Source: Syncephalis fuscata S228 (Eukaryota > Fungi > Zoopagomycota). From it: DNA of 64,000 nucleotides. Below, piece by piece: positions 2,017-39,732 of this stretch. Under the pieces are notes generated by a model, which saw only the letters and a list, made by a program, of their open reading frames with translations, was not told the origin of the DNA and made no database searches. A program made the position numbers and the translations under genes. Position 1 is the stretch's first letter. Each line of letters opens with the position of its first letter. The stretch lies in contig JAHLTZ010000017.1 of assembly GCA_025786725.1 (NCBI GenBank), forward strand, positions 434,001-498,000, given 5' to 3'.

Positions 2017-2272
2017 GATCTAGACGGGTAAATACGACAAACAATCAAGTTGAAGCAATCAACAAGCGAGTAAGAAATCAAAGAACAGCCACGTACACAC
2101 ACACAGAGACGCACAGTAAAAGATAAAAAGCGACGTGTATCGACAATTATAAACAAAAATCCAAATATCACGTGGTTTTTGAGTAATCTTATTTATTATG
2201 TTGTTTCCTCCTGAATATTACAGTATTTGAACTACGCTAACATTTTCTATATTATAATAAGACAATTTAGAT

Positions 2273-2884
2273 TTATTGTATAATATATAATAATTTATTA
2301 TAATGGCATCTACCAGTTATTGTTTGTTGATAATCATAGTTTGATGGATTAAGCATTCGATCGATCATAAATATTGTGTTGTTTTTATGCCAAGAATTGG
2401 AAATAACCTTGGCGCAATTTACATACAAAGCTTTATCTTTTATATAAAGACGAAGTGGCATGTCCGCATAGTTATTAAAAAGTATATATTTGTCTGGAGA
2501 TAGAACGCTAGGGAAATCAGAATGATTGGCCATGTGATATCTTGCTTGGATATTGGTTATACTACCATGAAAAGCTTTATCCTCTGGTACAAAAGCTATA
2601 CCATTACGGGTATTTAATGGAAACGAGTCGTTGGAAGTGGTTTTAAGTATAATATTGGCAGCATTGAAAAACGAGCCATAACCTTGGTTTCTAGTCTCGT
2701 TGAGTGCTTTTCCTAACGAAAACGGATTATTTTCCCATGGGCCTTCAGAAAATGGAAAATTTCTTTGTTTTGAAGAGTGATCTATGGGCGATTCAGAGAC
2801 GTGCTCTTTAGACTTGGGTTCGGTAGGGACAGCTGTCACTACCGATAATAATAAAAATGCAAGAAATATAACGTGAAACAACAT
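2273..2884 (-). CDS. Small secreted protein with a single FAS1 (fasciclin)-like domain, copy 1 (203 aa, intronless)
   Basis: Signal peptide MLFHVIFLAFLLLSVVTA; FAS1-like motifs IAFVPEDKAF (H1), ARYHM, LYVNCAKVI, IFMIDRML (H2); paralogue at 5779-6366. Confidence 0.75.
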   Translation of the reverse strand: MLFHVIFLAFLLLSVVTAVPTEPKSKEHVSESPIDHSSKQRNFPFSEGPWENNPFSLGKALNETRNQGYGSFFNAANIILKTTSNDSFPLNTRNGIAFVPEDKAFHGSITNIQARYHMANHSDFPSVLSPDKYILFNNYADMPLRLYIKDKALYVNCAKVISNSWHKNNTIFMIDRMLNPSNYDYQQTITGRCHYNKLLYIIQ

Positions 2885-3701
2885 GCTTGAAATGCTAGTG
2901 TGTTATCACAAAAATGGTATATTCGATACAAACAGAATGTAGGTAATGTTTGAAAATACAGAAATGCTAAACAAGAAGGATGCAATAAAGTAAAATTATA
3001 TTGTTGACTTTTTACCATTCATTTATAGTTTTATGCAACTGATGATGTTCAATAATGTTCGTTTAGCCATTAAGCAAAGTCATACTGAGGTTGACAAACT
3101 ACGCCATTGTCTATTGTTGTATTTTGTACCTTTGTGCCTTTGTTGCTCTTCAAATAAATATTAAATGTATTTTCTTTATTTATTTAGCTAATAAATATTA
3201 AATAAAGCTTGTTATTTTAGTTTATATCAATAAATATACATTGTATAATAATTACAAATAACGTAGAAATGGTGTTGACATACAACTATCTAATCGAAAG
3301 GTTAAGATAGTTTCATCATGCGATATATTGTTGAATATTATACTTGTGCAACCATCATGTTGAATGTAAATCACATGCTTCATCATCCATTTCCAGACCT
3401 TCTTTGTTCTCGTATGCACACTTGCAAAATACGTGAGTTGTAACATGCAGTACAACCACATGAACATGGTTTGTTGCCATTCCCAGCAGAGTAGACCTTG
3501 AATACCACATGAACAAAAACAACATTTATTAGTGCAGTATTGCATGATGTATTTATCTAATCTGTTGCTCATTTTATTACTCTGTATTTGCACTCAACAC
3601 TCGTACTATTTGTAACTTTGTTTATTAGAGCTAGCAGGTCTGCTCTACTCTGTCACAATCAATCCGCATCACCAACTACTTACACTTATTACTCGATTAA
3701 C

Positions 3702-5309
3702 ATGCGTTTCCTAAATCCTTCGCATGAACCCACTTCACTTGTGCTATCCCGCGTACTATTCATAGTCATGGGAGTTATTGGACTATCTTTAATTATGAGC
3801 CGAGAAATATCCCACTTTGTTGAGCAAAAGAATGTTTATCAAGTGGAATATTATACCGAACCACTTGCCATGCCAGCCATACTATTTCGATCAATAGTAG
3901 CGCCTAAACTTATGGCTATATATAATATAGCTGTTACTAGTAATTCAGGAGATAGAATATACAGTATAGCTGAAGTCAGCGAACTAATCAAACCCATCAA
4001 ATGGAACAGTAATGTAACCGATTCAAGCTATTCAATTCAAGACTGGAAAATACTTAAAAACTCACAAGTATCTCCATCATTAAATAATTCGATACTTTAT
4101 ATGGCCATGCTAGATCCTAAGATTAGTCATACCTTTGTTCCAAAAACTCAAAATAATCCTGAGAGGGTTAGAATGAATGGCAACAATATTACTGAATTAC
4201 ATATGAGATTTGAAATACGAATTCCTTTAATCGATACGGTTATTACCAAACAACCCTCTGATTTTCAAGCTGAAATATTTGTCATTGACAATCCTGATTT
4301 GCTTAATTCAACAAAGCATGGCAAACCATTTGATTTGGCTACAGTTGATTCGGGATCTCGTTTTATTATGAAAAGTGGAACCAGAACTAAGATTGGTTTT
4401 TTTCAAAGCTACACCGAAAAAGATAATCAAATTGAAAGAATGTACGACGTTGGAGTTTATGAGCAGTGGGGAACGAATTCAACAGCGGTCGAGTTTACTA
4501 TTATTCCTCGCAACAAGCCATCTGCCAATAGAGATAGTTTCATAGTAAGAAAAGAGTTTGCGCAACGCCCCGTTAGTCTATTCCAAATAATTGGTGCTAT
4601 TGGCGGTGCTATATCACTTTTTATTATTATTTTCACTATACTTTTTGGCCAAGGTCGTCTCCGGCCATGGGGGATAATTCAGCAGTATTTTATGCGCAAC
4701 AAGATGCTTAATGTTTTACCACAATCCATGATTAGCATTAAATCTTATTACGATCCCAGATTTAATCATGAATTAGCCACTGATATGAAAGGTTTACATA
4801 TGCCAAATTCAGAACAATATAGCACAGCATTCCGGTCATCAAAGTCCACTGTCAACACATATCGACAAAAGCCACTAAATAATGACATATCACAACGTAT
4901 ACCATCTACACTTGCTAATGACGAGCAATCATATTTATCTACTGCTGATACTCGCGGTAGTGAGATTTGTGAACTCAAGGCAATGATAGTGGCACAAAAA
5001 GCGCAGATGGAAACTCAGAAAATAAGCATGGAAGCACAAATGGCAACTCAAATCAAGCAATTGGTAGTAATGTCCAATCGATTTGCAACACTTGAAGATG
5101 ATCCAGGCATAAACAACAGTACTACGGTTCCGAATAGCTTTGTTTTAGACGATACATGTTTACCAAATTTATCAATGACTCAACATAGTAAATCACCTGC
5201 TTTTACATCCGAAATGTCGTTGCTTCAAACTCGTATGGCAAGCATGGAGGCTTTCCAGTGTCGATTGAAGACATTTTACTTGTCATCTGATTTGTTTAAA
5301 GATGCTTAG
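3702..5309 (+). CDS. Two-transmembrane protein with large ectodomain and coiled-coil cytoplasmic tail, DEG/ENaC-like architecture, copy 1 (535 aa, intronless)
   Basis: First ATG at 3702 (the ORF track starts at an upstream TTG); TM1 VLFIVMGVIGLSLIM, post-TM1 LAMPAILF, TM2 FQIIGAIGGAISLFIIIFTILFG followed by RLRPWGIIQ; heptad-like ELKAMIVAQKAQME. The CDS is certain, the channel assignment is inferred. Confidence 0.8.
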   Translation: MRFLNPSHEPTSLVLSRVLFIVMGVIGLSLIMSREISHFVEQKNVYQVEYYTEPLAMPAILFRSIVAPKLMAIYNIAVTSNSGDRIYSIAEVSELIKPIKWNSNVTDSSYSIQDWKILKNSQVSPSLNNSILYMAMLDPKISHTFVPKTQNNPERVRMNGNNITELHMRFEIRIPLIDTVITKQPSDFQAEIFVIDNPDLLNSTKHGKPFDLATVDSGSRFIMKSGTRTKIGFFQSYTEKDNQIERMYDVGVYEQWGTNSTAVEFTIIPRNKPSANRDSFIVRKEFAQRPVSLFQIIGAIGGAISLFIIIFTILFGQGRLRPWGIIQQYFMRNKMLNVLPQSMISIKSYYDPRFNHELATDMKGLHMPNSEQYSTAFRSSKSTVNTYRQKPLNNDISQRIPSTLANDEQSYLSTADTRGSEICELKAMIVAQKAQMETQKISMEAQMATQIKQLVVMSNRFATLEDDPGINNSTTVPNSFVLDDTCLPNLSMTQHSKSPAFTSEMSLLQTRMASMEAFQCRLKTFYLSSDLFKDA

Positions 5310-5778
5310 TTTAATTACTATCTATAATAAATTATATAATAATATTATCTAACATTAAAATGATTACTAAGTAATAATAGTAGTAAATGTTGAAAATATT
5401 ATATTAAACTATTAATATGCAGAGACATAGAAGATACGGTATATGAGAAACAAATCAAAAAAGATCATTACAACAAAATAATACGGATAGTTATATCAGT
5501 TAAATGAACATTTATGCTCTGAATAATTAAATGTATTTTATTACGATGTTTTGACTTAAATGTTGTAATTACATTTATTCTAGCTTACAAATACATTTTT
5601 AGTATAAACATTTAGTCAAGTCAGAGTAGCATCAAGTTGAGTGCATTATTCACATTGGATCAGGTCTCTAGTGATGATTCTATTAGAAAATAATATAATG
5701 GATAGTGCTATTTGATATTCAATAAATAAAGCATGCCAATTCAAGTTTGTATATATTATATACAATATTTTATTATGA

Positions 5779-6366
5779 TCAACATTCTCCTTTGACTGCC
5801 CGACCATAATCATCGTCTCCTGGGCTAAGCATTCGGTCAATCAAAAATACTATATTGCTATTGTTCGGATTGATAATCGTATTAATAATTCTTGCACAAT
5901 TTACATACATAGATCCATTTTTTGGACGAATGTAAAGCTTCCAGCCTGCATAGCTTTCGACAGCACTATGGGTGCCTCGCTCCAAAGACATGGGAAAGCC
6001 ATTACGAGAGGTCATATAATATTTCGCATGTAGCTCGTCCAAAGTGCCGCTAAAAGTATTGTCCACTGGTACAAATGCAATGCTATTTTTGGAATACATA
6101 GTACGCTTTTTGTTAGACTCGTATAAAAATAAATCATGAATTATGCTATAAAACAGCGCGCCACCAAAAGAACTAGTTGATGCTATAGCGCTTCCAAAAG
6201 AAAATGGAATATCTATCCAATTTTTTTCGTATTTTGGATCTTGTATAAAAGCTGAATTCGTGTCAACAAAAGTTCGATCAGCGCGTTTTTCAAGTGTGGG
6301 TTTAATAGGCCCTGCTGCTACAACCAAAAATAAAACAAGTGCAAGAAATATAACATGCAATAACAT
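5779..6366 (-). CDS. Small secreted FAS1-like protein, copy 2 (195 aa, intronless)
   Basis: Signal peptide MLLHVIFLALVLFLVVAA, dibasic EKR site, IAFVPVDNTF, AKYYM, MYVNCARII, VFLIDRML. Confidence 0.75.
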   Translation of the reverse strand: MLLHVIFLALVLFLVVAAGPIKPTLEKRADRTFVDTNSAFIQDPKYEKNWIDIPFSFGSAIASTSSFGGALFYSIIHDLFLYESNKKRTMYSKNSIAFVPVDNTFSGTLDELHAKYYMTSRNGFPMSLERGTHSAVESYAGWKLYIRPKNGSMYVNCARIINTIINPNNSNIVFLIDRMLSPGDDDYGRAVKGEC

Positions 6367-7157
6367 GCTTGAAATGATGGAGTGCTATCACAATAAATGG
6401 TATGCTTGATATAAACAAAATGCAGATAATGCTTGAAAATACAAAAATGCTAAACAAGAAGGATGCAATGAAATGAATGCGAAGTGAAGAGCATACTACC
6501 AACTTTGTACCATTCGTTCGTAGCTTTATACAAAGGATGGTATTCAATAATAACTGCCTAACTATTGGTCAAAGTCCATAGTGAGATTGGCAAATACGTC
6601 ATTGCCTATTTATTGTGCCTTTGCACTTTTAATTGTTTTCATTTCAGTAGATATTAAATAAAGCTTGTTATTTTAGTTTATATCAATAAATATACATTGT
6701 ATAATAATTACAAATAACGTAGAAATGGTGTTGACATACAACTATCTAATCGAAAGGTTAAGATAGTTTCATCATGCGATATATTGTTGAATATTATACT
6801 TGTGCAACCATCATGTTGAATGTAAATCACATGCTTCATCATCCATTTCCAGACCTTCTTTGTTCTCGTATGCACACTTGCAAAATACGTGAGTTGTAAC
6901 ATGCAGTACAACCACATGAACATGGTTTGTTGCCATTCCCAGCAGAGTAGACCTTGAATACCACATGAACAAAAACAACATTTATTAGTGCAGTATTGCA
7001 TGATGTATTTATCTAATCTGTTGCTCATTTTATTACTCTGTATTTGCACTCAACACTCGTACTATTTGTAACTTTGTTTATTAGAGCTAGCAGGTCTGCT
7101 CTACTCTGTCACAATCAATCCGCATCACCAACTACTTACACTTATTACTCGATTAAC

Positions 7158-8741
7158 ATGCGTTTCCTAAATCCTTCGCATGAACCCACTTCACTTGTGC
7201 TATCCCGCGTACTATTCATAGTCATGGGAGTTATTGGACTATCTTTAATTATGAGCCGAGAAATATCCCACTTTGTTGAGCAAAAGAATGTTTATCAAGT
7301 GGAATATTATACCGAACCACTTGCCATGCCAGCCATACTATTTCGATCAATAGTAGCACCTGGATCTCTTGATATATATAGTGTAGCTGTTACCAGTAAT
7401 TCAGGATATAAGAGATATAGTGCGCGTAACATCAAAGAAATACTTAAACTTATCAAATGGAACAGCAATGTAACCGATTCAAGCTACCCAATCCAAGACT
7501 GGAAGTTTTTTAATAGTAGACAAGTATCTCCATCATTAAATAATTCGATACTTTATATGGCCATGCTAGATCCTAAGATTAGTCATACCTTTGTTCCAAA
7601 AACTCAAAATAATCCTGAGAGGGTTAGAATGAATGGCAACAATATTACTGAATTACATATGAGATTTGAAATACGAATTCCTTTAATCGATACGGTTATT
7701 ACCAAACAACCCTCTGATTTTCAAGCTGAAATATTTGTCATTGACAATCCTGATTTGCTTAATTCAACAAAGCATGGCAAACCATTTGATTTGGCTACAG
7801 TTGATTCGGGATCTCGTTTTATTATGAAAAGTGGAACCAGAACTAAGATTGGTTTTTTTCAAAGCTACACCGAAAAAGATAATCAAATTGAAAGAATGTA
7901 CGACGTTGGAGTTTATGAGCAGTGGGGAACGAATTCAACAGCGGTCGAGTTTACTATTATTCCTCGCAACAAGCCATCTGCCAATAGAGATAGTTTCATA
8001 GTAAGAAAAGAGATTGCACGATACCCTGTTAGTTTATTTCAAGCAATTGGTGCAGTTGGCGGTGCTATATCACTTTTTGCTGCTTTGTTTACTATTCTTT
8101 TTGGCCAACGTCGCCTTCGACCTTGGGGAATTATTCAACGGTACTTTGTACGTAACAGAATGCTTAGTCTTTTGCCGAAATCTATGGTCAGCATCAAATC
8201 TGACTACCAGCCTAAATTTAATCACGACTCAGTCACTGATATGACATTCTTAAATATGCCAAATCCAGAACAACGCGGTACAGCATCCTGGGTGCCAAAG
8301 CCAACCAGTAATTTAAATCAACAACAAGCATCAAATAATGACACATCCCAGTCTATGACGTCTGTATTGATTAACAGTGAACAGCAAAATTTACCTAATA
8401 TTCATCCTCGTGCTGATGAAATACGTGAGCTTAAAGCAATGATGATAACACAGAAGGCGCAAATGGAGGCGCAAATGAAGCAATTTACAATAGTTTCAAA
8501 CCGGCTTGCAACACTTGAAAATGATCCAGGAACAAACAACAATACTATGATTCTAGATAAGCTGGCTCCAGATAGCACATGTCTACCTAATACTTCAATG
8601 GCTCATCATAACAACTCATTTGTATCTTCACGCAGCGCAGCATCAGTTGAAACTCGCTTGTCAAACCTTGAATCTTTTCAGTATCGATTGGGAACATTTT
8701 ATCTGTCATCCGACTTGTTTAAAGACACTTCATTTAATTAA
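7158..8741 (+). CDS. Two-transmembrane DEG/ENaC-like protein, copy 2 (527 aa, intronless)
   Basis: Paralogue of 3702-5309 at offset 3456; TM2 FQAIGAVGGAISLFAALFTILFG-RRLRPWGIIQ. Confidence 0.8.
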   Translation: MRFLNPSHEPTSLVLSRVLFIVMGVIGLSLIMSREISHFVEQKNVYQVEYYTEPLAMPAILFRSIVAPGSLDIYSVAVTSNSGYKRYSARNIKEILKLIKWNSNVTDSSYPIQDWKFFNSRQVSPSLNNSILYMAMLDPKISHTFVPKTQNNPERVRMNGNNITELHMRFEIRIPLIDTVITKQPSDFQAEIFVIDNPDLLNSTKHGKPFDLATVDSGSRFIMKSGTRTKIGFFQSYTEKDNQIERMYDVGVYEQWGTNSTAVEFTIIPRNKPSANRDSFIVRKEIARYPVSLFQAIGAVGGAISLFAALFTILFGQRRLRPWGIIQRYFVRNRMLSLLPKSMVSIKSDYQPKFNHDSVTDMTFLNMPNPEQRGTASWVPKPTSNLNQQQASNNDTSQSMTSVLINSEQQNLPNIHPRADEIRELKAMMITQKAQMEAQMKQFTIVSNRLATLENDPGTNNNTMILDKLAPDSTCLPNTSMAHHNNSFVSSRSAASVETRLSNLESFQYRLGTFYLSSDLFKDTSFN

Positions 8742-9216
8742 TATTTACAATAAATTATTCAATTATATGTATCGTAATAACTGTGTATTGAAAATTTTAA
8801 AACATAATATTATAAATGATAAAATTATAATAGAGGTCATAGCATATGGTCAAAATACTTTATTCCATATAAGCAAAAACAAGACTTACAATTTAAAAGA
8901 GAAGAATGTTTATAGTTTTAGCTTACATTTAAGCATTTAGAATAATAAAAAAGTAGCATTAAAGATAATTATACACATTGTATATCCTATTGTGTTTCCA
9001 GTGACGACCATTTTACAATGTAGCAAAAATGGTTGGAATAGAAATCGAGGCATGCCCAGGTGTTATCAATGGCACTTCAATGTATCTAAAGGGGTTTACA
9101 AAGTCTATATTGCATGACAATTGACTGGGCGTATGTGTTAATAAAATAGCAGCAGAGACAATAACCATGACAGCCAACTGATATCTTTTTTCTTCGCGAA
9201 CAAACTATCTAGCAGT

Positions 9217-10644
9217 ATGACCATTCAAAGCAAAGAACACGGTATTGAAGAGCCGATCTGCCAATTCAGGCCACCTGAAGGACTTGAATTAAAGTCGGCC
9301 TATGTCACGCCGCTGGATATGATTATGCCGATGACGTATAATCGTCATATTTACTTTTATCGTAATCCAGATCCGACAACCGAGTTTATGCCTACAGAAC
9401 AACTGGCTGCTGGTCTCGAAAAAGCACTGACCTATTATCCAGTGCTCTATGCCGGTATTACAACACTGCCTGACCTTCAGCGTGTATTTGAGCCTACCGG
9501 AGCACCGATACCATTGTACGAGCAACAAGTTGACTATGGCTTTGAGAAATTTGAGCCACATTGGCGCCATAAAGATATACCGACTAAACTTGATGTACTA
9601 TCTGTGCGAGCAGATATTGCCAATGCACCAATGTTAGCCGCTCGTATTACACGACTACGCAATAATGAAGGCGTTGTTGTGACTATCGCTGTGCATCATG
9701 TCGTCGCGGACGGGTTCGGCGTGGAAATCTTCATGGAAACCTGGACGGCTTGTGTACGCGGTGAAGAGCCGTCACCGTTACCGTGCCACGAACGATCACT
9801 TATATCGCCGACGGGTCCACCATCCGAGGAGCATCCCGAATACTATTGGGTCAAACCAGAGTACGCTTCGTTTGAATATGCATTTACACCGTCTGAAGCG
9901 GCAGCCAATGCAGCTGGGGAAACTCCACCACCGCCAATGAAAACGGCAATCTTTCGTGTATCGGCAGAGCATCTTGCCCAGCTTAAACGAGAAGCGTTAC
10001 TTATGCCAGCCCCTGACGCTGACCTCGAGGATGTCTCGGACGTTGCATGGATATCAAGCGGCGATGCACTTACTGCACTTATTTGGCAGGCTATAACGCG
10101 CGCTGGCCATACATCGGGCCAGCTGCAGTCTAGCTTCCATATCGCGGCCAATTCACGCGCTCGTTTTGAGCCTCCATTGCCGTACAACTATTTTGGCAAC
10201 GCATCATTTCGCATCAATCCCGTTGCCATGACTGAAAAGCTAAAGCAAATGCCTCTTGGCTATTTGGCTCGGCTTATTCGCAAACGAAACAACGAAATGG
10301 ACGGCAATCGTTTACAATCGGCGGTTAATTGGCTTGCAGCACTTCCTGAGCACCAACGTCTACGCAGTCCAATTCAAGTCATGTTTGGCATTGATTTTGC
10401 ACTGGCCAATCTTGCTTTCCCGCAGATGTATGACGTGAATTTTGGTTATGGACGACCAGTACGTCGTCGCTTGCCTTATGACAATTGGAATGGCGGCGCT
10501 GTCATCTTTAGTCTGCCACCAAGCACAGCTGATGGCCCAGCCGGACAAGAAGGTGTTGAGTTTTACCTTGGTATGCTAGCCGAGAATTTTAATCAACTAT
10601 TAGCCGATGAGGAATTTATTCGATTTGCCGAATATATTGGCTAA
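9217..10644 (+). CDS. CoA-dependent acyltransferase, BAHD/'Transferase' family (Tri101-like), intronless
   Basis: Catalytic HxxxDG (HHVVADG), SSGDALTALIWQAI, NSRARFEPPLPYNYFGNA, and DFGWG-like DVNFGYG. Confidence 0.9.
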   Translation: MTIQSKEHGIEEPICQFRPPEGLELKSAYVTPLDMIMPMTYNRHIYFYRNPDPTTEFMPTEQLAAGLEKALTYYPVLYAGITTLPDLQRVFEPTGAPIPLYEQQVDYGFEKFEPHWRHKDIPTKLDVLSVRADIANAPMLAARITRLRNNEGVVVTIAVHHVVADGFGVEIFMETWTACVRGEEPSPLPCHERSLISPTGPPSEEHPEYYWVKPEYASFEYAFTPSEAAANAAGETPPPPMKTAIFRVSAEHLAQLKREALLMPAPDADLEDVSDVAWISSGDALTALIWQAITRAGHTSGQLQSSFHIAANSRARFEPPLPYNYFGNASFRINPVAMTEKLKQMPLGYLARLIRKRNNEMDGNRLQSAVNWLAALPEHQRLRSPIQVMFGIDFALANLAFPQMYDVNFGYGRPVRRRLPYDNWNGGAVIFSLPPSTADGPAGQEGVEFYLGMLAENFNQLLADEEFIRFAEYIG

Positions 10645-10999
10645 AGCAGCACCAATTACTATTGTATTATTTTCTTTATATCAATAAAGCTGTAAAGCAT
10701 CGTTTCAGCTTTATAATAATGGTTGTATTTAAAGATTATTTTGTAACATTATAGTTTTGTATACAACTTTACTGCATAGTAAGTACCAAGCCTTTACAAA
10801 CATTAAGTAATGATCTTTTAATGTAATGTAATGGTCAAATGGCTATTTTAAATAATATTCATACATTTAAACTACACATTTGTTCTAGTGAACATGGAAC
10901 TGGGCGGTGAGTAATACGAAAGATTAAATTACTCATTGTAATACTCATATCAGCATTGATAAAGTCTTCAGTCTTTATTCAACTAGTTAATAACTAATT

Positions 11000-11197
11000 T
11001 TATTCAGATTCCTTGCCAGAGGTATGCGTGAGTGCACCAATTACAACAGCAGTGTTAGCAACAACATTCGTCGGAACATGGACTGGTACTTGAACAAAAT
11101 TGCCTTGAGGAATTGGTGTTGGTCTGGCAGTAACTATAACCATATGGACAACCAATATACTGGCAAAAGCACAAATAAAAGTAATAGAGCTTTTCAT
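11000..11197 (-). CDS. 65-aa secreted chaplin-like (DUF320) protein
   Basis: ATG at 11197; signal peptide MKSSITFICAFASILVVHMVIVTA, then GNFVQVPVHVPTNVVANTAVVIGAL, matching the chaplin consensus GNxVQVPVHVPVNVCGNTVxVIGLL. Confidence 0.75.
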   Translation of the reverse strand: MKSSITFICAFASILVVHMVIVTARPTPIPQGNFVQVPVHVPTNVVANTAVVIGALTHTSGKESE

Positions 11198-11405
11198 ATT
11201 GATAGTAGTATAGTTGAACCGGAAACTGAAGCGTTTACTGTATATAACGAACAGTGTTTGACAGAACAAAGGTTATTTCGTAACAAATATATAGAAAGAG
11301 TGTCAGTACTCATTATAATCTAATCGAACATCAATAAATATTCTAATCAGCCATCTAAATAACATTTTTCTTTTGACTTTATTAATCTTTTATATAGTCA
11401 CTACA

Positions 11406-12694
11406 ATGAATATCGGCCACTTTGTTTCGCCTTCTGTAAGAAGTTTTGCGTGGCATTTAGCTTCACGGGCCACATTCCTTTCAGTGGGTCTGACCAGCAA
11501 AGCATTTCTTTCATTAGGCGTATATAGCCAACTATATGGTATGGATAGATTGCTACAACTACTTCATGATCCCCAGCGTAAACAGCCTATTATTACAGGC
11601 AAGTAAATGACGCGTCCATATCTATTCTATTTACTTATATCGATGTCTATGTAATAACTTTTGAATTAGTCGCCAATCATGCATCGACGTAGGTAGACCA
11701 TGACTGCCGCCCATACGACGACAATAGTTCTATCGACACGCGACTGACCGCCTAACACAACGACAATGACTACTATTACACTATATTCTCTTTCTTCTTT
11801 CTTTCTTTTATTCTAAACTTGTAGACTCGATGATCCGTTACTCTGGGGATTCTTGCCGGCGCGTACACTTGCTCAACCAAGATCTATTCGATGGTCACTA
11901 GGTGCCAAGGAAGTTTGTCATAAGAACAAGTAGGTCAATATACCAATCAATTTCTTGTCTATAATAACAACTTCTCTAGAATACTTGATCGGTTCTTTGA
12001 AGTTGGAAAAACATTACCAATTGTTCGTGGTGATGGTATTTATCAACCAGCTATGAATTTTGCATTGGATCGATTAAATAATAATGAATGGGCAAGTATT
12101 ACTGTGTATTAACTAGAATAATGAAGATGTCTATTGAAACAATTTAAATCTTACATTATTATTACTATCAATGTTTTCTATACCATTTCTATTGTAATAC
12201 CATAATATAGGTCCATATATTTCCAGAAGCACGGGTCAATCAGTTATCTGAAATGATACGCTTTAAATGGGGTGTAGCTCGACTTATTATGGAGTGTAAA
12301 ACTTTACCAATTGTACTACCATTGTGGCATCAAGGTAATACCAATAAAAGCACTATTACATTTAGTCTAATCTACAATATACCATCTACATATATACATA
12401 TATATAGGTATGGCAAATATTATGCCATTAAACTCAAAAATTCCTTTACCACGTCTAGGTAAACGTCTTGTATTAGCCATTGGTGATCCAATCCAACTTG
12501 ATGATTTATATGTAGCCAGTCGACCACTTGTTACTCGACAATATAATTCAATGCCGAACATGGCAAATAAGACAGGATCTATCTATAATATCTATAGCGA
12601 TGAACCAAAAGCCGTAGTTGATATGCGTATACGTATTATTGATCGGCTATATAGTGCACTTGCATCACTTCAGCAGCAATATAAAATATACTAA
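11406..12694 (+). CDS. TAZ1: Tafazzin (cardiolipin transacylase), 6 exons
   Basis: Spliced product contains [73 protein letters not shown]. Confidence 0.93.
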
Positions 12695-13061
12695 TTACTT
12701 ATTTACAATGTACATGTGTCATAATTAAAATTATAACTATTTGTAAAGGCAACTACAATCACATATTTATATCGACCATTAAAATGTCTATGATAACAGG
12801 CGATAAAGGAGAAGACGATGAACAACAGTAATAATATAAATTGATATTTATCCATAGATTAGTTCGAATAGACCCAAAAATAGATATGAACAATCCAGTA
12901 GAAAGATAAATAAATCCAATTATCCAGTGTTGTCGTTGTATTAGGATTAGCAGTAACAATAACAGTAGTGGTGGTGGTGGTGGAGTGGTAATGGTGGAGG
13001 TGGTAGTATTAAAGATCCAAATACTACAATAGTAAATGGTAGAACGGATGGAAAATACTTA

Positions 13062-15161
13062 TTATTTCTTGCCGAAAATCTTCTTTGTAGACCTGTACAG
13101 TTGTGGATAGACGCATGTGAATATGCGTGCAAGTTCAGAAATGTATATTTGTATTCATTATAGGAACCGCTTTGCACCTCGAACCCTGTATAATACAGAA
13201 GACAGAGAGAAAACAGAGCATAGACCGCGGTTCCATAACAAACAAGTGTGAACACCATAGTATAATCAAAAGTATAGATGCCATTACTGGATCTATTGCA
13301 CAATCCTCCCTTTCCTACTCTACTCTATTCCTTTTTCTTTTACTTGTATATTATTACTATTTCTCTCCTCTCACTACCCTTTACTCTATCATGTCTATTT
13401 CTTTTTATAATTCACTTACCCGTAGAGAAGATTACGCTGACCAAGTAGCGCATCCAGTTCGCGTTCTTCCTCGTTCATCATACGTTTCTGTTCCTCGAGT
13501 TCGGCCATAAGCTGTGTACGGCGTGAAATCAATTGCTCCTCACGTTCCCGTAGTGTAGCTTCCTTCTCACGAACCTTTTGTACAAAGGCACTTCGCATAT
13601 CTTCTTCTTTACGGAACATTTCATCAACCATGCTTTGCTTAGTAGCCTCAATACGTGTCTCATACGCATCATCACAGGCTAGAATCGACTCACGTCGTCC
13701 ACCGGCCCGCAATTGACCTGCACGGTAATTGGCATAATGATGCGTGTGTGTCGTCTCGATAAGATCGGCAAGACACGTATCCATAAGCATACGACGCAAA
13801 TGAATAAAATCGCAATGATTTTCATCATCCACTGATAAAATAGTCTATTAGCTATAGTGTTTGTTATATTCCCGATTACTTACCGGCTACTGTGCCCCAA
13901 CGATAAACACGACCACGCGTCTTTCGACCATTAACCTCGACAAGGCGGTCACTGCCAATAACCGAGAATGGAATATATTGCTACAGATAATGAGTAACCG
14001 TAGTATTATTAATAAATAGATTTATACTTACTTCAAGGTCTTGGATATGCTCCTTTTCATCAGTAAAGGCTGTTGGATACATAGGAATACTATGGCGTTC
14101 AATGTCACTTAAAATCTAATAATGCCATCGATATTAGTACTGTTAATACAATTGCAACCATTACTATTTACCGAACGTTTAAAGAAGGCACGTTCCGTTG
14201 GCGTCAGTGTATCAGCCTTAGCAATGACTGGAATGACATTAACCTTCTTTGACAAAGTCTTTAATACTTCAATATCTAATTCCTTTAATCTGTATTGCGT
14301 CAATTAGCGTATATTTAGTAGATACTCCTTTTTAACCTACTTGTGGCCCGTAGGCGTGACAAAGTAAAGTAGAGCATGGACACGTGTATCCGGAATGGCC
14401 ATACGAAAGTTTGGACTGCGTTCTGCTTTAAGATAAGCATCAAATTGCTCATCAATATACTCTACAATTGGGAATAGACTAGGAAATAGTGATGAGTTAC
14501 ACTAGTGTAATAAATTAAATACGATCTAGTTACTTTGATTCACGATTCAACTGGTCACCAAAGCCGGGCGTATCAATGACCGTAAGATTAAGCGTAACAC
14601 CGCTTTCACTGAGTTCTATTTATTGTGTATAAGTAATCTATGCATTTGACAGTGCATACAATGCCTTACCATAGTATTTTGGATCTATTTGAACGGTTTT
14701 TGTATCTTGCGGAGTTTTTGGCAATATTTCTTCGGTAAGATCGGTGTTGAATAGCGTGTTCATAAATGTCGTCTTGCCTAGACCCGTATCGCCTATAGCA
14801 TAGTAGGAGATTATTATATGCATGTTGGATGTTAGCAATCCGCCGTCGGACTATTAATAATAAATTGCCACTTACCGACTACCATAATATTAAAGACAAA
14901 TGGACGTCTACGTGTACGTTCATATGTTTGTTTTGGCAATGCTTCAATACCAATCTCGTCGGTCAATACTACATCCATAGATTTTGGTACCTTCCATGGT
15001 CCAGGATCTGGAAAGCGGCCACTGCATACAGCATTAATATAAGTGCGACTATGTGCTGAAGTAGCTTACCGATTTTGAAGGGCATATTCCTAGTATATGC
15101 ACCATTAATAGATTAGCTTGTGATAGAGCCATATTGACTATATGCTACTTACAAGAGGCAT
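13062..15161 (-). CDS. Septin GTPase with C-terminal coiled coil (multi-exon)
   Basis: [21 protein letters not shown] (P-loop), [44 protein letters not shown]; ATG at 15161; last exon 13062-13092 inferred (…[12 protein letters not shown]). Confidence 0.92.
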
Positions 15162-15547
15162 GATGAAGTAAAATCTTACTGAAGATACCGATTATTATTA
15201 ACACTCGCAAGTAAATAGTAGTATAGTGCTGTAATAAGCGGAAATAATAGAGTGTCACGCTGGTCAAATCCTAACCGGCAAAAACACTAGGTGATAAACA
15301 GTAGTAACAGCAATTACAGGAGGTAACCGCTGGTAATAAAGACAGGGAGGAGTGTTACGGGCAGTGCGTTGGTCAGTGTCCGTTTAGACGAGGGTTTTAG
15401 AATGAAAGGAGACGCGTGCTTGTGCAAGAGATGATGAAGCCACTTGAAAGAATAAGCAGATAAGCTGGATGGATAGGTGCAGCTCATGGCCATAGCCAAT
15501 CAGCGTGTGCTATTCTCTATCGGAGCTTGTAAGGATGCGTCGTAATT

Positions 15548-15567
15548 TGTGTGTGTGTGTGTGTGTG
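15548..15567. repeat. (GT)n microsatellite
   Basis: tgtgtgtgtgtgtgtgtgtg. Confidence 0.9.
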
Positions 15568-15803
15568 TAATGTACACATGTCACCACATGCATTCAATAA
15601 ATTGAGACTAATCAATCGTGTTCAAGGCAAGTTATAAAATCGTCGATAATTAACAAAATAGATTTGATTGATTAATTAAGAGTACACACATATATACATA
15701 CATATAGACATACATATAAATACATATAAATACATATATATATACACTTATATAATTCAAGGGTGTTACATTGAAGGACAAGTGTAATAATAGCTATTTT
15801 AAT

Positions 15804-16631
15804 CTAGGCACGAACCAACTCTTTGACTTCTCGTTTGGCCTGTTTATCAAATTTGATAAATGTTAGATTGGGTGGCAATTCTTCAACCTTCTCTTCAAAG
15901 AAACGTGCTACTGCATGATTAACACGGGCTGGTTGCGGTAGATGCATATTAGGTGTAGTGGCTATTGCTTGGTCATAAAGTGCTTGGGCCAAGTCACCGC
16001 CATTAACAACATTAGTAAGTGCACGGTTAGGCAAATGAATATGGCATGTCTCCATGGCTTGTACAATGACCTAATAATACATCAATATATAATTATTAAT
16101 TATTAATTAATTACTTTTATTAATATCTTACCTCGTATTTTAAACGTTGAGGTCGAAGTGGCACAGTCTGCCAATCTTGACCCACCTGTTCACTTGATCG
16201 ATGATGAGCAATAATGGCTGTTTTAACCGCTTGATTAATAGATTCAATATCTGTTTCGGACGATGTGGCATGCAATCTACATAGTATCATTTAGTAAATC
16301 TACTCATTATTAATAATGCCGTTACTTACTTTTCCATCCAGCCAGGTACTCTTGGTTCAGTATCTGATGTCCATGCAATATTGTCAATATCTGTAGTTGC
16401 TACATCTTTGGATGCTTGTTCAGTATCCGGTGTTACTGTTGCATTAACCGGTTCGTTTACTGTATCTGGCGGCGATTCTTCTGGTTTCTTCTCCTGATCT
16501 CCACGACGAAACCAACCGAAAATACCATCGCTTTTACTTGATTCATAACGTGTAGCTCCTACCGCCAGTACACGGCCTGGTCTTAATAAGCCGGTGGGCC
16601 GTGACATGGACGATAATAATACGCGATTCAT
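15804..16631 (-). CDS. Mitochondrial ribosomal protein mL50-like (3 exons)
   Basis: Arg/Ser-rich presequence MNRVLLSSMSRP..., then W....L.....KYEVIVQAMETCHIHLPNRALT and terminal LPPNLTF. Confidence 0.65.
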
Positions 16632-16911
16632 AATTGTATATAAACTGAATCTTAATAGCCTACACCAGTACAGCAAGATCCGCCTATCCACACAACTCAA
16701 CCTTTTTCTTCTTATTTGCAATTAAATGAACAAGAAAAGATCGATTAGTATTTGTGTGTGTGTATTTGTCTCGGTGTAAACGTGAATAAAATGTAATGAT
16801 CAAAAATCAAATGTAAATCATAGTACAAAAGTTGTAAATAAAAAAAAATAAAAAAATCACAGCTTACATCTTTTACGTTATTTCTTTTGTCGTTTATATA
16901 AACTTTACAAT

Positions 16912-19177
16912 ATGGTGAGCCAAGAGTTGAAACGGAAGCGCTCTGTAGCTGCTGTAAGTTATAGCTGGATATTAAGAGTTCTATTTATAAAGCTAACTAT
17001 AATGAATAGACGGGGAATTCAGATTATGCTGAATTGATTGAACAAGCACGCCAACTGGCCCAGCGTGTACGAGAAAGCAAGCGTAATCTTAATGATATTC
17101 TACAGTTGATTGAGTTTTGTCAGGTAGATAGATTCTATAGCTATTTCTATTTTACTTATTGTATTTATTGTATTTATAGCATAAATCATCTGAAGTTGTC
17201 CATGCTACCGTACAAACTACCGGCCGTTTATTTGCCGACCTATTAAAGCAGGGTGACTTACCCGTACTAAAAGAAACGGCCCCGGCCGATTCAGCCCAAG
17301 CAACGGTCGCCGACTGGCTTCTTGAACAATATGGACTATACATAGATCGACTTATTGCTTTATTGAACCATCGTCAAGTAGCACTACAGCTTGTATCACT
17401 CGATACACTACTACTGCTTGTACGAGTAGAGTCGGCCTATATGACAAGTCTAGAGGGCAGATATATATTTGCTGTTAAATTGTATGGACGTATTATTTCA
17501 ACTATTTTAAACACAACTTCATTAGATGAAAATTTATTACGAACATTTGAGGATAAATATCATTTGAAATATGATGACTTACGTTATCAAGGATTCTTAT
17601 TAATGACAGATATATTCAAGACTGCTTCAGGTGTACTAAGTGAACATGAAGCAGCTACTGCCAAGGTAATGCTATAAAGTATCCTATATTATATAGCAAC
17701 TATTAACCATTAACCATTATATTAGAAACGCCGTGTTGATGGATCACGGTCCAATCTACAAGTATTAGTTGATAATGGATTTCTTATACTTGAGCGTTTA
17801 CGTGCCTTCCCTTCAGATGATTCACGTATTAATACTTTCTGGACTGATGTTAGCCTTGCCGGTAATAACTATTGAATATTTTTAACTATTTAATCTAACC
17901 AATTGGTTACTATTATTATATATTATTAGAGGCAATGCATAAGGATGATGAAAAACGTCGTCATCAAATATTGCAATTAAAAACTCATCGAAAGGCATTT
18001 GAAGGTTGTTGGCTTGCCTATCTTAAATTGCCACTTACTTTAGAATTATATCGAAAGATTCTATTAATTATGCATAAACGATTAATTCCATTTATGGCAC
18101 AGCCAACTTTATTAATGGATTTCCTTACTGATTCATATAATGCAGGTATGTTACTAATACTATAATATTTATCGTAAAGCTAATTGTTACTATTATTATT
18201 ATTATAGGTGGTGCTATTAGTCTACTTGCTCTTAATGGTCTATTTACTTTAATACATAAACATAAACTGTAAGTTATTGTAGAGTAGCTTTTTACGATAT
18301 CTAATACTTTATTTTATTAGTGAATATCCTGATTTCTACAAGAAACTGTATGCTCTGTTTGATCGCAATCTTATGCATGTCAAGTATCGCGCTCGTTTCT
18401 TCCGTTTGGCCGCCATCTTTCTTGCCTCTACGTAAGTTTGATTCATTATATGATAATATCGTTAATTTACCCTTTATTTACTAGGCATCTTCCTGCTTAT
18501 TTGGCTGCAGCATTTATTAAAAGAATGGCTCGTTTAACGTTATCAGCTCCGCCTTCGGGTATTGCTATCATAATCCCATTTATATACAATCTACTTCGAC
18601 AACATCCATCGTGTATTGTGTTGATTCATCGTATACCTGGTCAAGATGAACAAGAAGGCAAGTATTTAATAGTATTTAATAGTATTTATATATTTATAAT
18701 ACTAACTGATATACTAGTGTCTACCATCAGTGGATTAGATGCTGATCCATATAATTACAATGAAGAAGATCCAGCTAAATGTCAAGCCATTCATAGTTCA
18801 TTATGGGAAATACAAGCAAGTATTTAATTAACCATTGTCCATGCACTTATTTACTAATGACTATCTATTAATATTTACCATTTAGGCATTGGATAATCAT
18901 TATTATGCCAATGTTGGTACATTAAGTCAAATATTCTCTCAACATTTCAACAAACCATCTTATGATTTAGAAGACTTTGTAGATCATACGTATTCAACGG
19001 TAAGTGGCCGTTTTAATAGAATATAAATAGAACGTTTATTTAATAATATAGCTATTTGATGCCGAGACAAATCGACGAATTAAAAAGACACCAGCTGTTG
19101 AGTATTACAACGAACCAAGTCTATTTGAAGATGATGCAGCATTACTACAAGACTGGAATATGAATCTATTCGAATGA
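16912..19177 (+). CDS. NOC4: Nucleolar complex protein 4 (CBF/Mak21 domain), multi-exon
   Basis: LMDFLTDSYNAGGAISLLALNGLF, YPDFYKKLYAL, HLPAYLAAAFIKRMARL, SSLWEI...HYY. Confidence 0.93.
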
Positions 19178-19319
19178 TTATCTTCTAACTATTAATAAAA
19201 TATTAAACAAAAAAGACACTGAAACGTTTAATCGTATTACTGATGACATACTGTTATGTTTATTATTAATATGTTGCTTGGTTGGCTTGCTTATTTGCAA
19301 GTCATCATATCTCCGTTTA

Positions 19320-21808
19320 TTATATGACTTCGCTAATGATGGTAAATGCACGATTATACACATCAAGCATACTTTGACAACGAGATCGTTCCGCAGCAAT
19401 GGCCTCATCTTCTTGCAGTAGCGTGTCAAATATATTTTCACGATACAACGCGGCTACAAGTCGATTCTGAACAGCATCGCGTGTTTGATCGACCAACAAG
19501 TGCATGATCGCTTTGGGTACCAAATCCTGAATGGATTTACGTACAATGTTGAAATACGATGTAATTAACGAGCCTAATAAATAGTATGTAACATGTGTTA
19601 ATATACAAATAGATAGCAAATGAATTTAATAATACTTACGAATAAGCTGGACTTCAGCCTCTTCACGATCTGTTAGTTGTGGTCCATCTTCCGAAATAGT
19701 TAGCGATTTCTATATCAATACGTTAGTCACTGGCATGTATATAATGGCTATGACATACCATTTCTGGCACAACCGATGGATCGTGTACTCTACCAGGCAT
19801 GACCATATCTTTGGCCACCATATCATGGGTAGAGCTTATTACATCGCTTGATCGGCCAGTGGGTCGGTTGCCGAAGAAGTAGTTCAAAAAGTCACCGCCT
19901 TGTTGGGTGCCACCGTGTGACTCAGCCATAGGTGTGGTGTGTGGTGGGTCACGAGTCCGTGTTTGACGGCGATCATCGCGGTCCTCCGAATCACTGCCCA
20001 GATGAGCAGATGCCGCCTCTAAGCTACTAATACCCGCTGGGAGTGTCTGTGCCTGCTATGTTGATTAGTGGTCAATTATAGACATGTCTACTATCGTATT
20101 AATGCCTAGTGGCTTACCCGTTTTGTGGACCGATCATTGCCACGTCGCTTTTTATCGCTACGTCTATCGTTTATTACCATTTGCTGGGTTGCAGAAATAA
20201 AGTCGGGATGATTGGTATTAATATACGCACGTTGAATTGAGATTAGACTTTCAACATATTCTGATGTAGGCGATAGTCGTTCACGTAATAGCGTTGTGAC
20301 CACTTCAATTAGCTTAGCTTGGAATTTGGGATAACGACGCAATTCGGCACGATTACCACATACATGGCAAATCTTGACTAGTTCTTCGTAGGCCAATTCG
20401 ACACAGCGTAAGCTAGGTGGCTCAAGTCGTCGGATTTGCGGCTTTACCAGTAGATCAAAGGCTATTTCTGGTACAAATAGCGAAGGACGTGGACCCGTTG
20501 AATTACGAATGGCTGTACGAATGTCGTGCGAAGTTAAATTGCCGCATGGTAGTAATGAATCCAATGCTGTGCCAAAAATGTTATTGAAAATGTAATAAAT
20601 ACGTGCACCGCCACATAGCTCAGTTGTTGTAATCTCTGAAGAAGTACCTTCAACTGATGAGCTGAAATCATTAGCGAATTTGGTGAGTAATCGTAGTACA
20701 AGTGTGCCTTTATGCTCTTGATCAATAAACTTGATATCGCCATAAGAAAGCAGCTCTTGTTGTGCAGCACTAATCAATGTATTCAATCGTGCTTTGATGT
20801 CCGGTAAACGTTCGCGGATATGCGAAATTAAAATCTGATTAAGCGTTTTGGTCAAATGCTCAGTACCGCATCGCTTTGAAATTGATCGGTAGGCAGGATG
20901 AGAGGCGAAAAAGTCGTGCTCATGACGTAGAGCAGCATCAATTGGCTTATTCGTTGTAATATCCTGTTGACTGCGATTAACAACGCCAATAAAGCCAAGA
21001 CGCAAATGATATACACGACCGGTTAGCATGTCAAGTGCATTTGTACCGGCATCCATTAAATCGACCTTGGTAAGTACACCAATCGTTCGCCGTCCTTCTG
21101 GATCAACTTCTTTGGCCAGTTTCAAACTTTCGGAGTTGACTAAATCGACATTGGCCGGGCTTACCGCAAGAATAACACTGTTTGGCTTGGAAATGAAATC
21201 AAGAACTAATGCACGTGTCTGCTTCTCAATATCTGTTGGCTGGTCACCAACTGGAATTTTTGTCAATCCAGGCAGATCAACAAGTGTCAAATTAACAACA
21301 TCCGATGAGAAGATTTTTAGATGAATTGGTTGACGGCCAATGCCTTTGTTACTGCCGGCTAGACGTGACGTTTCACGCTCAATTTCATCGCGTACATCGG
21401 AGAATCGCGTAAACTTTTGCCCTGGCATGTGTAGAAACTCGGCCCATTCCTCCACGCCTGGATTAGACTTTGTTTCCGTTGGAGTGGCAGTATCGAGCAT
21501 TGCCGGTCCAGGTAGATTGACCAATTGCAGCACTAATGGACGACGTGTAACAATACCACTACCGCGAGGCAGGAAATCACGGCCAACTATATTCTCCAAT
21601 ACTGAAGACTTGCCTGCAGATTGCGATCTACCAGGCGTTGTAGTAATAACAGGCACCATTTAGTACAATATACGTATTGATTCGTATCTTATCCATTATG
21701 TCGCGGTACTTACCCGACAACAACAATCTGAGGCAGATCAATCTGATCGCTACCGATCGTGTTGAACACATCCTGAAGCTTATTCACCACGGGAATCAGA
21801 TCGTCCAT
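19320..21808 (-). CDS. DNM1: Dynamin-related GTPase Dnm1/Drp1 (mitochondrial fission)
   Basis: [87 protein letters not shown]. Confidence 0.95.
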
Positions 21809-22357
21809 AATGGTGGCGAAAGAAAGGTAAGCAGCAGTTGCAAAGAAAAAAGAACGCTATCAACAGAGAAAAAGAGTAGAAATCAATAGACACGGCTATA
21901 GAATTAAAATTAATCAATCCACTCTACACATACAATGATCGATGTATACACACAAGGAACTATTTGTTTACACATATACACACACAGTACACACAAAGCA
22001 CCGATACATCCTTTTGTGCCGATGACACGATAGATTATGCATACTGATACGCGATAATATCTATTATACTATTGGTACAAAAAAGGGCTTATGATGTCAG
22101 GGGCAGTGAGTACGTGTAAGGCTTTATGTGTTTAGTAGAGGCCCATTAAATGGCTATTTACGTCATCCCACTCACTTTACACCCCTACAAGATTTAGTGT
22201 ATTCGCTTTAACTGCTTCATATCAACACTTCACACGCTTCGCTGTCTATTCTCGTTGCTTTCTATTCACCGCTTTACTCTCCACTGCTTGTTTATTCAAG
22301 TTACTGCACATTAACACTACCACTACTCCTATTGCTACTATTGCTACTATTGCTACC

Positions 22358-37404: not shown

Positions 37405-37487
37405 TCATGAAAATAAAATATTAAATATTGATTTGCCACTGAATAATAGCTCTTTTCTTTCTATCTTTTATCGTTAATACATTTCCC

Positions 37488-39566: not shown

Positions 39567-39732
39567 GCAGTGGTAGATGGATGATGGTTAGAACTCAACT
39601 AACAAGCTGAGTGTGCGTGTGTGTTGATTAGCTTATTGTTTTTTTTAGTAAAAATGTAACTTTTTCTCGTCTCATTTATCTGCTATTTGTGTGTCATATT
39701 CTAACGGTTGTACTTTTATAAACTTTAACCTA

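What the first reader, a model, noticed from the sequence alone, without database searches (positions are those of the whole stretch)
11000..11197. Streptomyces-type chaplin (functional amyloid) gene in a fungal genome
Seen: 65-aa intronless ORF, a signal peptide plus RPTPIPQ-GNFVQVPVHVPTNVVANTAVVIGALTHTSGKESE. Established: actinobacterial chaplins (DUF320/PF03777; consensus ~SPGVLSGNxVQVPVHVPVNVCGNTVxVIGLLNPAFGNxC) form the hydrophobic amyloid coat of aerial hyphae and spores, the job hydrophobins do in Dikarya. The match is near residue-for-residue over ~25 aa; both Cys are absent, as in ChpE. The codons are AT-rich like the host, so it is not contamination. Inference: an old bacterial-to-fungal transfer giving a hydrophobin substitute or an adhesion/surfactant amyloid. 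Gene callers could easily miss it.
Basis: partly seen in the sequence, partly recalled or inferred. Interest (0 to 1): 0.8.

Follow-up and report, generated by a model that had tools for sequence, protein, structure and literature searches.

The report
Chaplin-family gene in Syncephalis fungus
A mould-parasitising fungus (Syncephalis) carries a small, host-adapted gene for a secreted peptide that truly belongs to the bacterial chaplin amyloid family. Similar genes are already annotated in a few other fungi, and nothing yet shows that this one is expressed or what it does.

Summary
Window 11000-11197 (-) is an intact 65-aa ORF: a signal-peptide-like N-terminus followed by a 41-aa peptide. Residues 32-64 match Pfam PF03777 (chaplin) at 36.5 bits against a cut-off of 21 (E 4.5e-9). 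Shuffled versions score at most 14 bits.

The gene lies in a eukaryotic contig. A neighbouring Dnm1 exon is 94% identical to Syncephalis plumigaleata, and the adjacent gene has an intron. GC3 is 0.26, like the host genes. The "second copy" on contig C42 is an allelic haplotig, so this is one locus. The coding sequence differs between haplotypes at 1 of 198 sites, against 18 of 564 in the flanking spacers.

It is not the first fungal chaplin. Conidiobolus coronatus has a tandem array of 10 single-domain genes, annotated "DUF320-domain-containing". Two Panaeolus species also have one. I found no paper that discusses these.

The Syncephalis peptide is the most divergent of them. It has no Cys, the SPG and NPxFGN motifs are lost, and it sits on a long branch. 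The data do not reject a shared origin with the other fungal genes (AU p 0.72), nor do they show one.

No sequencing run was listed, so expression is untested. Secretion, amyloid or surfactant behaviour, and transfer from bacteria are all inferences. The scan's notes held no earlier record of this on other DNA. Verdict: new member of a known kind, moderate interest.

The parts
11000..11197 (-). Complete intronless coding sequence: 65 codons plus stop TAA at 11000-11002
   Evidence: Intact in both haplotypes, with a single V20A difference.
11126..11197 (-). Predicted signal peptide, residues 1-24: Lys at position 2, a hydrophobic stretch at 5-22, and V-T-A before the proposed cleavage site
   Evidence: Read from the sequence. 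AlphaFold2 models residues 3-22 as the only helix. No dedicated signal-peptide predictor was available, so a signal anchor is not excluded.
11003..11125 (-). Predicted mature peptide, 41 residues (25-65), about 4.3 kDa, pI about 6.9. The core 32-56 has GRAVY 1.10.
11006..11104 (-). Chaplin domain core, residues 32-64 on PF03777 profile positions 23-55. It holds the two hydrophobic segments (34-41 and 49-56) and the invariant G32, Q36, P38, P42, N44, V52 and I53.
10974..11004 (-). Two AATAAA polyadenylation-signal motifs. One overlaps the stop codon (10999-11004). The other is 21 nt downstream (10974-10979).
   Evidence: Read from the minus strand. This is a motif match only, with no transcript evidence.
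11241..11246 (-). TATA-like hexamer 44-49 nt upstream of the ATG. The ATG has A at -3.
   Evidence: Read. Motif only.

Best explanation
This is a real, single-copy gene of a Syncephalis species (Zoopagomycota). It is integrated in the host genome and encodes a short, Cys-less, single-domain member of the chaplin family.

Shown:
- homology to PF03777;
- location in a eukaryotic chromosome;
- host-like composition;
- an intact frame in both haplotypes, with fewer differences than the flanking spacers.

Inferred mechanism:
- The 24-residue N-terminus directs the peptide into the secretory pathway.
- The released peptide of about 41 residues is disordered as a monomer.
- Its two hydrophobic beta-prone segments (FVQVPVHV and TAVVIGAL) are separated by the conserved P-x-N turn. 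As in bacterial chaplins, they drive assembly into a beta-sheet, amyloid-like film at air-water or hydrophobic surfaces.
- In an obligate mycoparasite without detectable hydrophobins, such a film would lower surface tension, coat aerial sporophores or spores, or stick the fungus to its host hyphae.

Inferred origin: descent from an actinobacterial chaplin by an old transfer. That transfer may be the same one that gave Conidiobolus its chaplin array.
For: - Family match: Pfam 36.5 bits against cut-off 21. The genome-wide six-frame hit has E 2.3e-7. Shuffles reach at most 14.2 bits against 29.3 for the real peptide.
- phmmer against 1.84 billion proteins returned 89 hits. Almost all are actinobacterial chaplins, and one is a Conidiobolus coronatus DUF320 protein.
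- All 7 columns that are invariant in a 30-sequence alignment are kept.
- Eukaryotic context: the Dnm1 exon is 94% identical to S. plumigaleata. Window 11822-21818 is collinear with S. plumigaleata. The adjacent tafazzin-like gene is split by an intron.
- GC3 is 0.26, against 0.29-0.41 in host ORFs.
- The two haplotypes differ at 1 of 198 CDS sites and at 18 of 564 flanking intergenic sites. A Poisson test gives p of about 0.013 (my own arithmetic).
- TATA-like and AATAAA motifs are in the expected places.
- Chaplins without Cys still form amyloid fibrils and are surface active (PMC3079736). The region that paper predicts to be most aggregation-prone corresponds to residues 48-58 here.
- No hydrophobin domain was found in the genome.
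Against: - No transcript evidence: no sequencing run was listed.
- No orthologue was found among annotated proteins or metagenome contigs.
- None was seen in the 1.7 kb of S. plumigaleata next to the syntenic tafazzin gene. That stretch is occupied by a repeat, so this test is inconclusive.
- The domain is eroded: the SPG motif, G47, the N-P of NPxFGN and both Cys are lost.
- The mature peptide as a whole (GRAVY 0.02) is less hydrophobic than the S. coelicolor chaplins (0.16-0.60).
- There is one gene only. Long anchoring chaplins and rodlins are absent, so a Streptomyces-like coat system is not present.
- The long branch (1.69) could mean relaxed constraint.
- The AlphaFold2 model is uninformative (pLDDT 52).
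Confidence: 0.6

Rival explanations
1. It is a decaying relic: a chaplin-derived ORF that is still open by chance or only recently lost its function, and is weakly expressed or silent.
For: - Several near-invariant motifs are lost and the branch is long.
- It is a single copy, with no partner genes.
- No relatives were found in the protein and metagenome collections.
- There is no RNA evidence.
Against: - The frame, the ATG with A at -3 and the signal peptide are intact in both haplotypes.
- The CDS is about six times less divergent than the flanking spacers.
- All seven invariant core residues are retained.
- Codon composition is fully host-like, so the gene has been resident for a long time without being disrupted.
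Confidence: 0.22
2. It is functional but is not a self-coat. It could be a secreted mycoparasitism factor that acts on the host mould's surface or membrane. Alternatively, the hydrophobic N-terminus could be a signal anchor that tethers the chaplin core to the parasite's own surface.
For: - Syncephalis is an obligate parasite of other moulds (general knowledge; genus assignment).
- The gene lies at the edge of a block of intronless genes for secreted and membrane proteins (window 2200-11300; scan note s1-625171, not tested here).
- The hydrophobic stretch is 18 residues long, which is long for a signal peptide.
- Chaplins also mediate attachment to surfaces (PMC4255298).
Against: Nothing in the sequence points to a host target. 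The V-T-A motif after the hydrophobic stretch fits signal-peptidase cleavage. This rival overlaps the adhesion variant of the main explanation.
Confidence: 0.12
3. It is a chance resemblance of a Val/Pro-rich peptide, or bacterial contamination of the assembly.
For: The peptide is short and its composition is biased.
Against: - The score is 15 bits above the Pfam cut-off. Composition-matched shuffles reach at most 14.2 bits, against 29.3 for the real peptide.
- The contig carries intron-bearing fungal genes that are collinear with S. plumigaleata.
- Both haplotypes carry the gene.
- GC3 is 0.26. The actinobacterial chaplin loci fetched here have 65-77% GC.
Confidence: 0.02

Closest known systems
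Short chaplins ChpD-H of Streptomyces coelicolor, especially the Cys-less ChpE (Pfam PF03777 / DUF320)
   Same: - A signal peptide followed by one chaplin domain.
- The core pattern GN-x-x-Q-x-P-x-x-x-P-x-N ... N-x-x-x-V-I-G is kept, with up to 65% identity over 31 residues.
- No cysteines, as in ChpE.
- A hydrophobic, aggregation-prone segment in the same place.
   Different: - Eukaryotic host and AT-rich codons.
- The mature peptide is shorter: about 41 residues against 50-60.
- The SPG..SGN lead-in is replaced by a Pro-rich RPTPIPQ.
- G47 is Ala, and the NPxFGN tail is replaced by a polar, charged tail.
- The genome has no long sortase-anchored chaplins, no rodlins and no sortase.
Fungal chaplin-domain genes: Conidiobolus coronatus NRRL 28638 'DUF320-domain-containing proteins' (for example KXN67275.1), and Panaeolus cyanescens and P. 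papilionaceus 'chaplin domain / small secreted domain' proteins
   Same: - They are fungal, AT-rich and mostly intronless.
- Each has a eukaryotic-type signal peptide plus one chaplin domain.
- Many Conidiobolus copies also lack Cys.
- Conidiobolus belongs to the same phylum, Zoopagomycota.
   Different: - Those genes keep the full domain, including the P-I-D-A-T-G-A-S lead-in, SPG..SGN and NPxFGN.
- They form one clade (SH-aLRT 89).
- In Conidiobolus they stand in tandem arrays of 6-10 genes.
- The Syncephalis gene is single, at most 52% identical to them in the core, and falls outside their clade in the free tree. A joint clade is not rejected.
Fungal hydrophobins (PF01185, PF06766)
   Same: The proposed job is the same: a small secreted protein that self-assembles into an amphipathic, amyloid-like layer on aerial structures (PMC3364958).
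   Different: There is no sequence or fold relationship and no eight-Cys pattern. No hydrophobin domain was detected in this genome.

Membership tests
Chaplin family (Pfam PF03777, ChpA-C / DUF320) | Match to the family profile above its curated gathering score | tested here: met
   36.5 bits against cut-off 21, E 4.5e-9. 35.8 bits in the six-frame genome scan.
Chaplin family (Pfam PF03777, ChpA-C / DUF320) | N-terminal secretion signal directly before the domain | tested here: inconclusive
   The N-terminus has a Lys, an 18-residue hydrophobic stretch and V-T-A. It is modelled as a helix at 3-22. No signal-peptide predictor was available, so signal anchor and cleaved signal cannot be told apart.
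Chaplin family (Pfam PF03777, ChpA-C / DUF320) | Conserved core residues of the roughly 40-residue hydrophobic domain | tested here: met
   All 7 invariant columns are kept (G32, Q36, P38, P42, N44, V52, I53). Of the near-invariant ones, N33, N48, G54 and G61 are kept. SPG, G47, N57, P58 and F60 are lost.
Chaplin family (Pfam PF03777, ChpA-C / DUF320) | Two conserved cysteines that form a disulphide | tested here: not met
   The mature peptide has no Cys. This is not universal in the family: ChpE, other bacterial chaplins and most Conidiobolus copies lack them too.
Chaplin family (Pfam PF03777, ChpA-C / DUF320) | Assembly into cross-beta fibrils, and surface activity | not testable with these tools
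   The monomer model has low confidence (pLDDT 52). No solved structure of a chaplin exists to compare with.
Streptomyces-type chaplin coat system (short and long chaplins, rodlins, sortase) | Co-occurring long, wall-anchored chaplins with two or more domains | tested here: not met
   The genome matches PF03777 or this peptide at only one locus, present as two haplotypes.
Fungal chaplin clade (Conidiobolus / Panaeolus type) | Grouping with that clade in a tree, and the shared lead-in motif before SPG | tested here: inconclusive
   The free tree places it outside that clade, on a long branch. The AU test does not reject a joint clade (p 0.72). The lead-in motif is absent.

The most novel reading that the evidence does not exclude
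Chaplins, not hydrophobins, build the rodlet or hydrophobic coats of the hydrophobin-less Zoopagomycota. In this reading one ancient actinobacterial gene entered the ancestor of the phylum. It expanded into tandem arrays in Conidiobolus, whose spores are reported to carry a rodlet layer (Latge et al. 1986, as cited in PMC3364958). It survives in Syncephalis as this single, divergent, Cys-less gene.
Probability: 0.2. Interest if true: 0.8.

Novelty: new member of a known kind. Interest (0 to 1): 0.5.

Why it matters
Chaplins are treated in the literature as an actinobacterial invention, and hydrophobins as the fungal answer to the same physical problem.

A chaplin gene resident in a second subphylum of Zoopagomycota, alongside the unpublished arrays in Conidiobolus and the genes in Panaeolus, makes a simple question testable. 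What coats the aerial structures of fungi that have no hydrophobins, and was the solution borrowed from bacteria?

The peptide is only 41 residues long, so it can be synthesised and tested directly for fibril formation and surface activity.

The value of this single locus is limited. It has no expression data, its domain is eroded, and the better material for the question is the Conidiobolus array.

Tried and rejected
- The word-index protein search with the 65-aa peptide found nothing. Exact look-ups found no record. The ESM Atlas gave no usable hit.
- Sequencing runs: none was listed. Read laying could therefore not be used, and expression remains untested.
- A metagenome scan with the single peptide gave no relative. 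With alignment A1 it returned 80 loci, all 65-77% GC except one bacterial contig at 42% GC. None was closer to the window than the known chaplins.
- The third PF03777 hit in the genome (C124, 19 bits, below cut-off) lies in an unrelated ORF and was rejected.
- The weak hits to the peptide's signal region elsewhere in the genome (E 0.04-1) were rejected.
- The antisense ORF at 11024-11323 has no family match. There is no Rfam match in 9000-13000.
- NCBIfam gave no hit.
- The 'paralogue' reading of C42 was rejected. The whole 23.4 kb contig is collinear with window 569-23637 at 92-99% identity.
- S. plumigaleata: the 1.7 kb beyond the tafazzin-like gene holds a 1.2 kb repeat and no chaplin. Walking further along that contig needed the exact spliced product of a neighbouring gene.
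- The AlphaFold2 model has too low a confidence for a fold search. A PDB profile search found nothing.
- Capstick et al. 2011 (PMC3116418) is not held in the library.

Full report
**1. What is in the sequence**

The minus strand of window 11000-11197 carries an ATG-started ORF of 65 codons ending in TAA.

- Residues 1-24 form a Lys-containing N-terminus, an 18-residue hydrophobic stretch and V-T-A.
- Residues 25-65 form a 41-residue peptide with a Pro-rich start, a very hydrophobic core (residues 32-56, GRAVY 1.10) and a polar, charged tail.
- On the coding strand there is a TATATA 44-49 nt upstream of the ATG and an A at -3.
- There are two AATAAA motifs, one overlapping the stop codon and one 21 nt downstream. 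These are motif matches only.
- The antisense ORF has no family match, and no Rfam family matches the region.

**2. Is the chaplin match real?**

Yes.

- Pfam PF03777 (ChpA-C) matches residues 32-64 at 36.5 bits. The curated cut-off is 21 and E is 4.5e-9.
- The same hit appears in a six-frame scan of the whole 29.4 Mb assembly at E 2.3e-7.
- I built an HMM from 109 short chaplins. The real peptide scores 29.3 bits against it, and 5000 composition-preserving shuffles reach at most 14.2 bits.
- An exhaustive phmmer search of 1.84 billion representative proteins returned 89 hits at E below 1e-3. Nearly all are multi-domain actinobacterial chaplins with LAxTG sorting signals.
- In a 30-sequence alignment the peptide keeps all seven invariant columns (G32, Q36, P38, P42, N44, V52, I53).
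- It has lost the near-invariant SPG, G47, the N-P and F of the NPxFGN tail, and both cysteines.
- Lack of cysteines is also the state of ChpE, which still forms cross-beta fibrils (PMC3079736).

**3. Whose gene is it?**

- A Dnm1 exon 9 kb away is 94% identical to Dnm1 of Syncephalis plumigaleata. The next best hits are about 70%. The genome is therefore a Syncephalis species.
- Window 11822-21818 is collinear with S. plumigaleata contig JAIXMF010000004.1.
- The gene next to the chaplin ORF is a tafazzin-like acyltransferase interrupted by an intron. Its ATG is 209 bp away on the opposite strand.
- The ORF has GC3 0.26, against 0.29-0.41 for ten other ORFs in the window. Of the 80 chaplin loci fetched from metagenomes, 79 have 65-77% GC.
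- Contamination is excluded, and any transfer is old enough for full amelioration.

**4. Copy number and constraint**

The only other hit in the genome is on contig C42. It differs by one residue, V20A in the signal region.

All 23.4 kb of C42 is collinear with window 569-23637 at 92-99% identity. It is therefore the other haplotype, or a redundant haplotig, and not a paralogue.

Differences between the two haplotypes:

| Region | Differences | Rate |
|---|---|---|
| Chaplin CDS | 1 of 198 | 0.5% |
| Two flanking intergenic spacers | 18 of 564 | 3.2% |
| Neighbouring BAHD acyltransferase CDS | 16 of 1428 | 1.1% |

At the spacer rate about 6.3 differences would be expected in the CDS, which gives Poisson p of about 0.013 by my own arithmetic. 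This is modest evidence for purifying constraint.

**5. Relatives in other fungi**

The one eukaryote-looking phmmer hit is KXN67275.1 of Conidiobolus coronatus NRRL 28638, annotated "DUF320-domain-containing protein". Using it as a query gave the following.

- More C. coronatus proteins.
- A Panaeolus cyanescens "chaplin domain-containing protein".
- A Panaeolus papilionaceus "small secreted domain-containing protein".
- Many unnamed 71-73-aa proteins from a JGI sample.

The C. coronatus contig holds ten intronless single-domain chaplin ORFs within about 14 kb of 17%-GC DNA. Several deposited gene models fuse neighbouring genes: a second signal peptide sits in the middle of the product.

Two JGI contigs (sample 3300042649) hold six such genes each.

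The P. papilionaceus gene lies in a 1.08 Mb contig beside a CBM1-GH5 gene.

Fungal chaplin genes are therefore already in public databases. Full-text searches for chaplin with fungal terms, DUF320, PF03777, "chaplin-like" and Conidiobolus found no paper that discusses them.

**6. Where the Syncephalis gene fits**

- Over the 31-residue core it is up to 65% identical to Streptomyces-type domains, but at most 52% identical to the Conidiobolus/Panaeolus group.
- In a 95-row tree the other fungal sequences form one clade (SH-aLRT 89) among Streptomyces-like domains. The Syncephalis peptide sits outside that clade on a long branch (1.69) with no starred support.
- Only 52 columns are available. An AU test does not reject a tree that unites it with the fungal clade (p 0.72). 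That constrained tree even had the higher likelihood, because the quick free search was incomplete.
- One transfer into early Zoopagomycota and separate transfers are therefore both open.
- Transfer from bacteria to fungi is inferred from distribution only. Chater and Chandra suggest that actinobacteria themselves acquired chaplins horizontally (PMC4255298), so even the direction is not formally settled.

**7. Orthologue in S. plumigaleata**

This is undecided. The 1.7 kb beyond the tafazzin-like gene contains no chaplin by tBLASTn.

That stretch is largely a 1.2 kb repeat, which is also present in inverted orientation elsewhere in the same locus. The true syntenic position may therefore lie beyond the DNA I could fetch.

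Going further needed the exact spliced product of a neighbouring gene.

**8. Function**

Nothing here tests function.

- No sequencing run was listed for the stretch.
- The AlphaFold2 monomer is disordered apart from the signal helix (pLDDT 52).
- No chaplin structure exists in the PDB.
- The proposed mechanism is secretion followed by interfacial self-assembly into a beta-sheet film through the two hydrophobic segments. It rests on homology to experimentally studied chaplins (PMC3079736, PMC5618241, PMC6173799).
- No hydrophobin domain was found in the genome. That search had no positive control.
- Against a classical coat role: there is only one gene, there are no anchoring long chaplins or rodlins, the motifs are eroded, and the whole mature peptide is less hydrophobic than the S. 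coelicolor chaplins.

**9. Verdict**

- It is a new, divergent member of a known family in a new host lineage.
- Interest is moderate for this locus alone.
- The wider pattern is the more promising lead: chaplin arrays in hydrophobin-less Conidiobolus, whose spores are reported to carry rodlets (PMC3364958).

Noticed in passing
window 569-23637 against G000 contig C42 (L004, L006, L005): The whole 23.4 kb contig C42 is collinear with the window at 92-99% identity, so the assembly holds both haplotypes or redundant haplotigs. Other weak hits also came in pairs of contigs (C24/C351, C1/C112). Copy counts in this genome need care.
   Followed up: partly
L009 1466-15779 (Conidiobolus coronatus KQ964647.1): Ten intronless single-domain chaplin ORFs of 71-73 aa lie in about 14 kb of 17%-GC DNA. 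Some have the Cys pair and most do not. Several deposited gene models (P0038, P0090, P0091, P0092) fuse two neighbouring genes, which leaves a second signal peptide inside the product.
   Followed up: partly
L010 and L011 (JGI sample 3300042649): Two AT-rich contigs (23-24% GC) each carry six tandem Conidiobolus-type chaplin genes. They probably come from another entomophthoralean fungus in that sample.
   Followed up: no
L023 5001-5371 (Panaeolus papilionaceus JADNRZ010000019.1): A chaplin-domain gene with introns lies in a 1.08 Mb basidiomycete contig near a CBM1-GH5 gene. It is close in sequence to the Conidiobolus type, which suggests either fungus-to-fungus spread or a shared donor.
   Followed up: no
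L055 1824-2135: This is a 42%-GC bacterial contig, unlike the 65-77% GC of all the other hits. It encodes a chaplin domain behind a long leader that resembles a double-glycine bacteriocin leader. An HlyD-like secretion protein lies directly upstream. This could be a non-actinobacterial chaplin exported by a type I system.
   Followed up: no
L012 (S. plumigaleata) against window 11822-44350: L012 1-9300 matches window 37131-44350 in forward orientation, while L012 9991-20518 matches window 21818-11822 in reverse. The two species therefore differ by a rearrangement with a breakpoint just upstream of Dnm1. A 1.2 kb repeat (L012 20899-22125, inverted copy at 1007-2132) abuts the tafazzin-like gene.
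   Followed up: partly
Literature: PMC3364958: Conidiobolus obscurus spores are reported to carry a rodlet layer, which is attributed by default to hydrophobins. The chaplin arrays in Conidiobolus offer another candidate material.
   Followed up: no
window 2385-8480 against C42: The duplicated block of secreted FAS1-like and 2-TM genes is much more divergent between the haplotypes (92.5%, with 84-86% cross-matches between the duplicates) than the rest of the region (97-99%).
   Followed up: no
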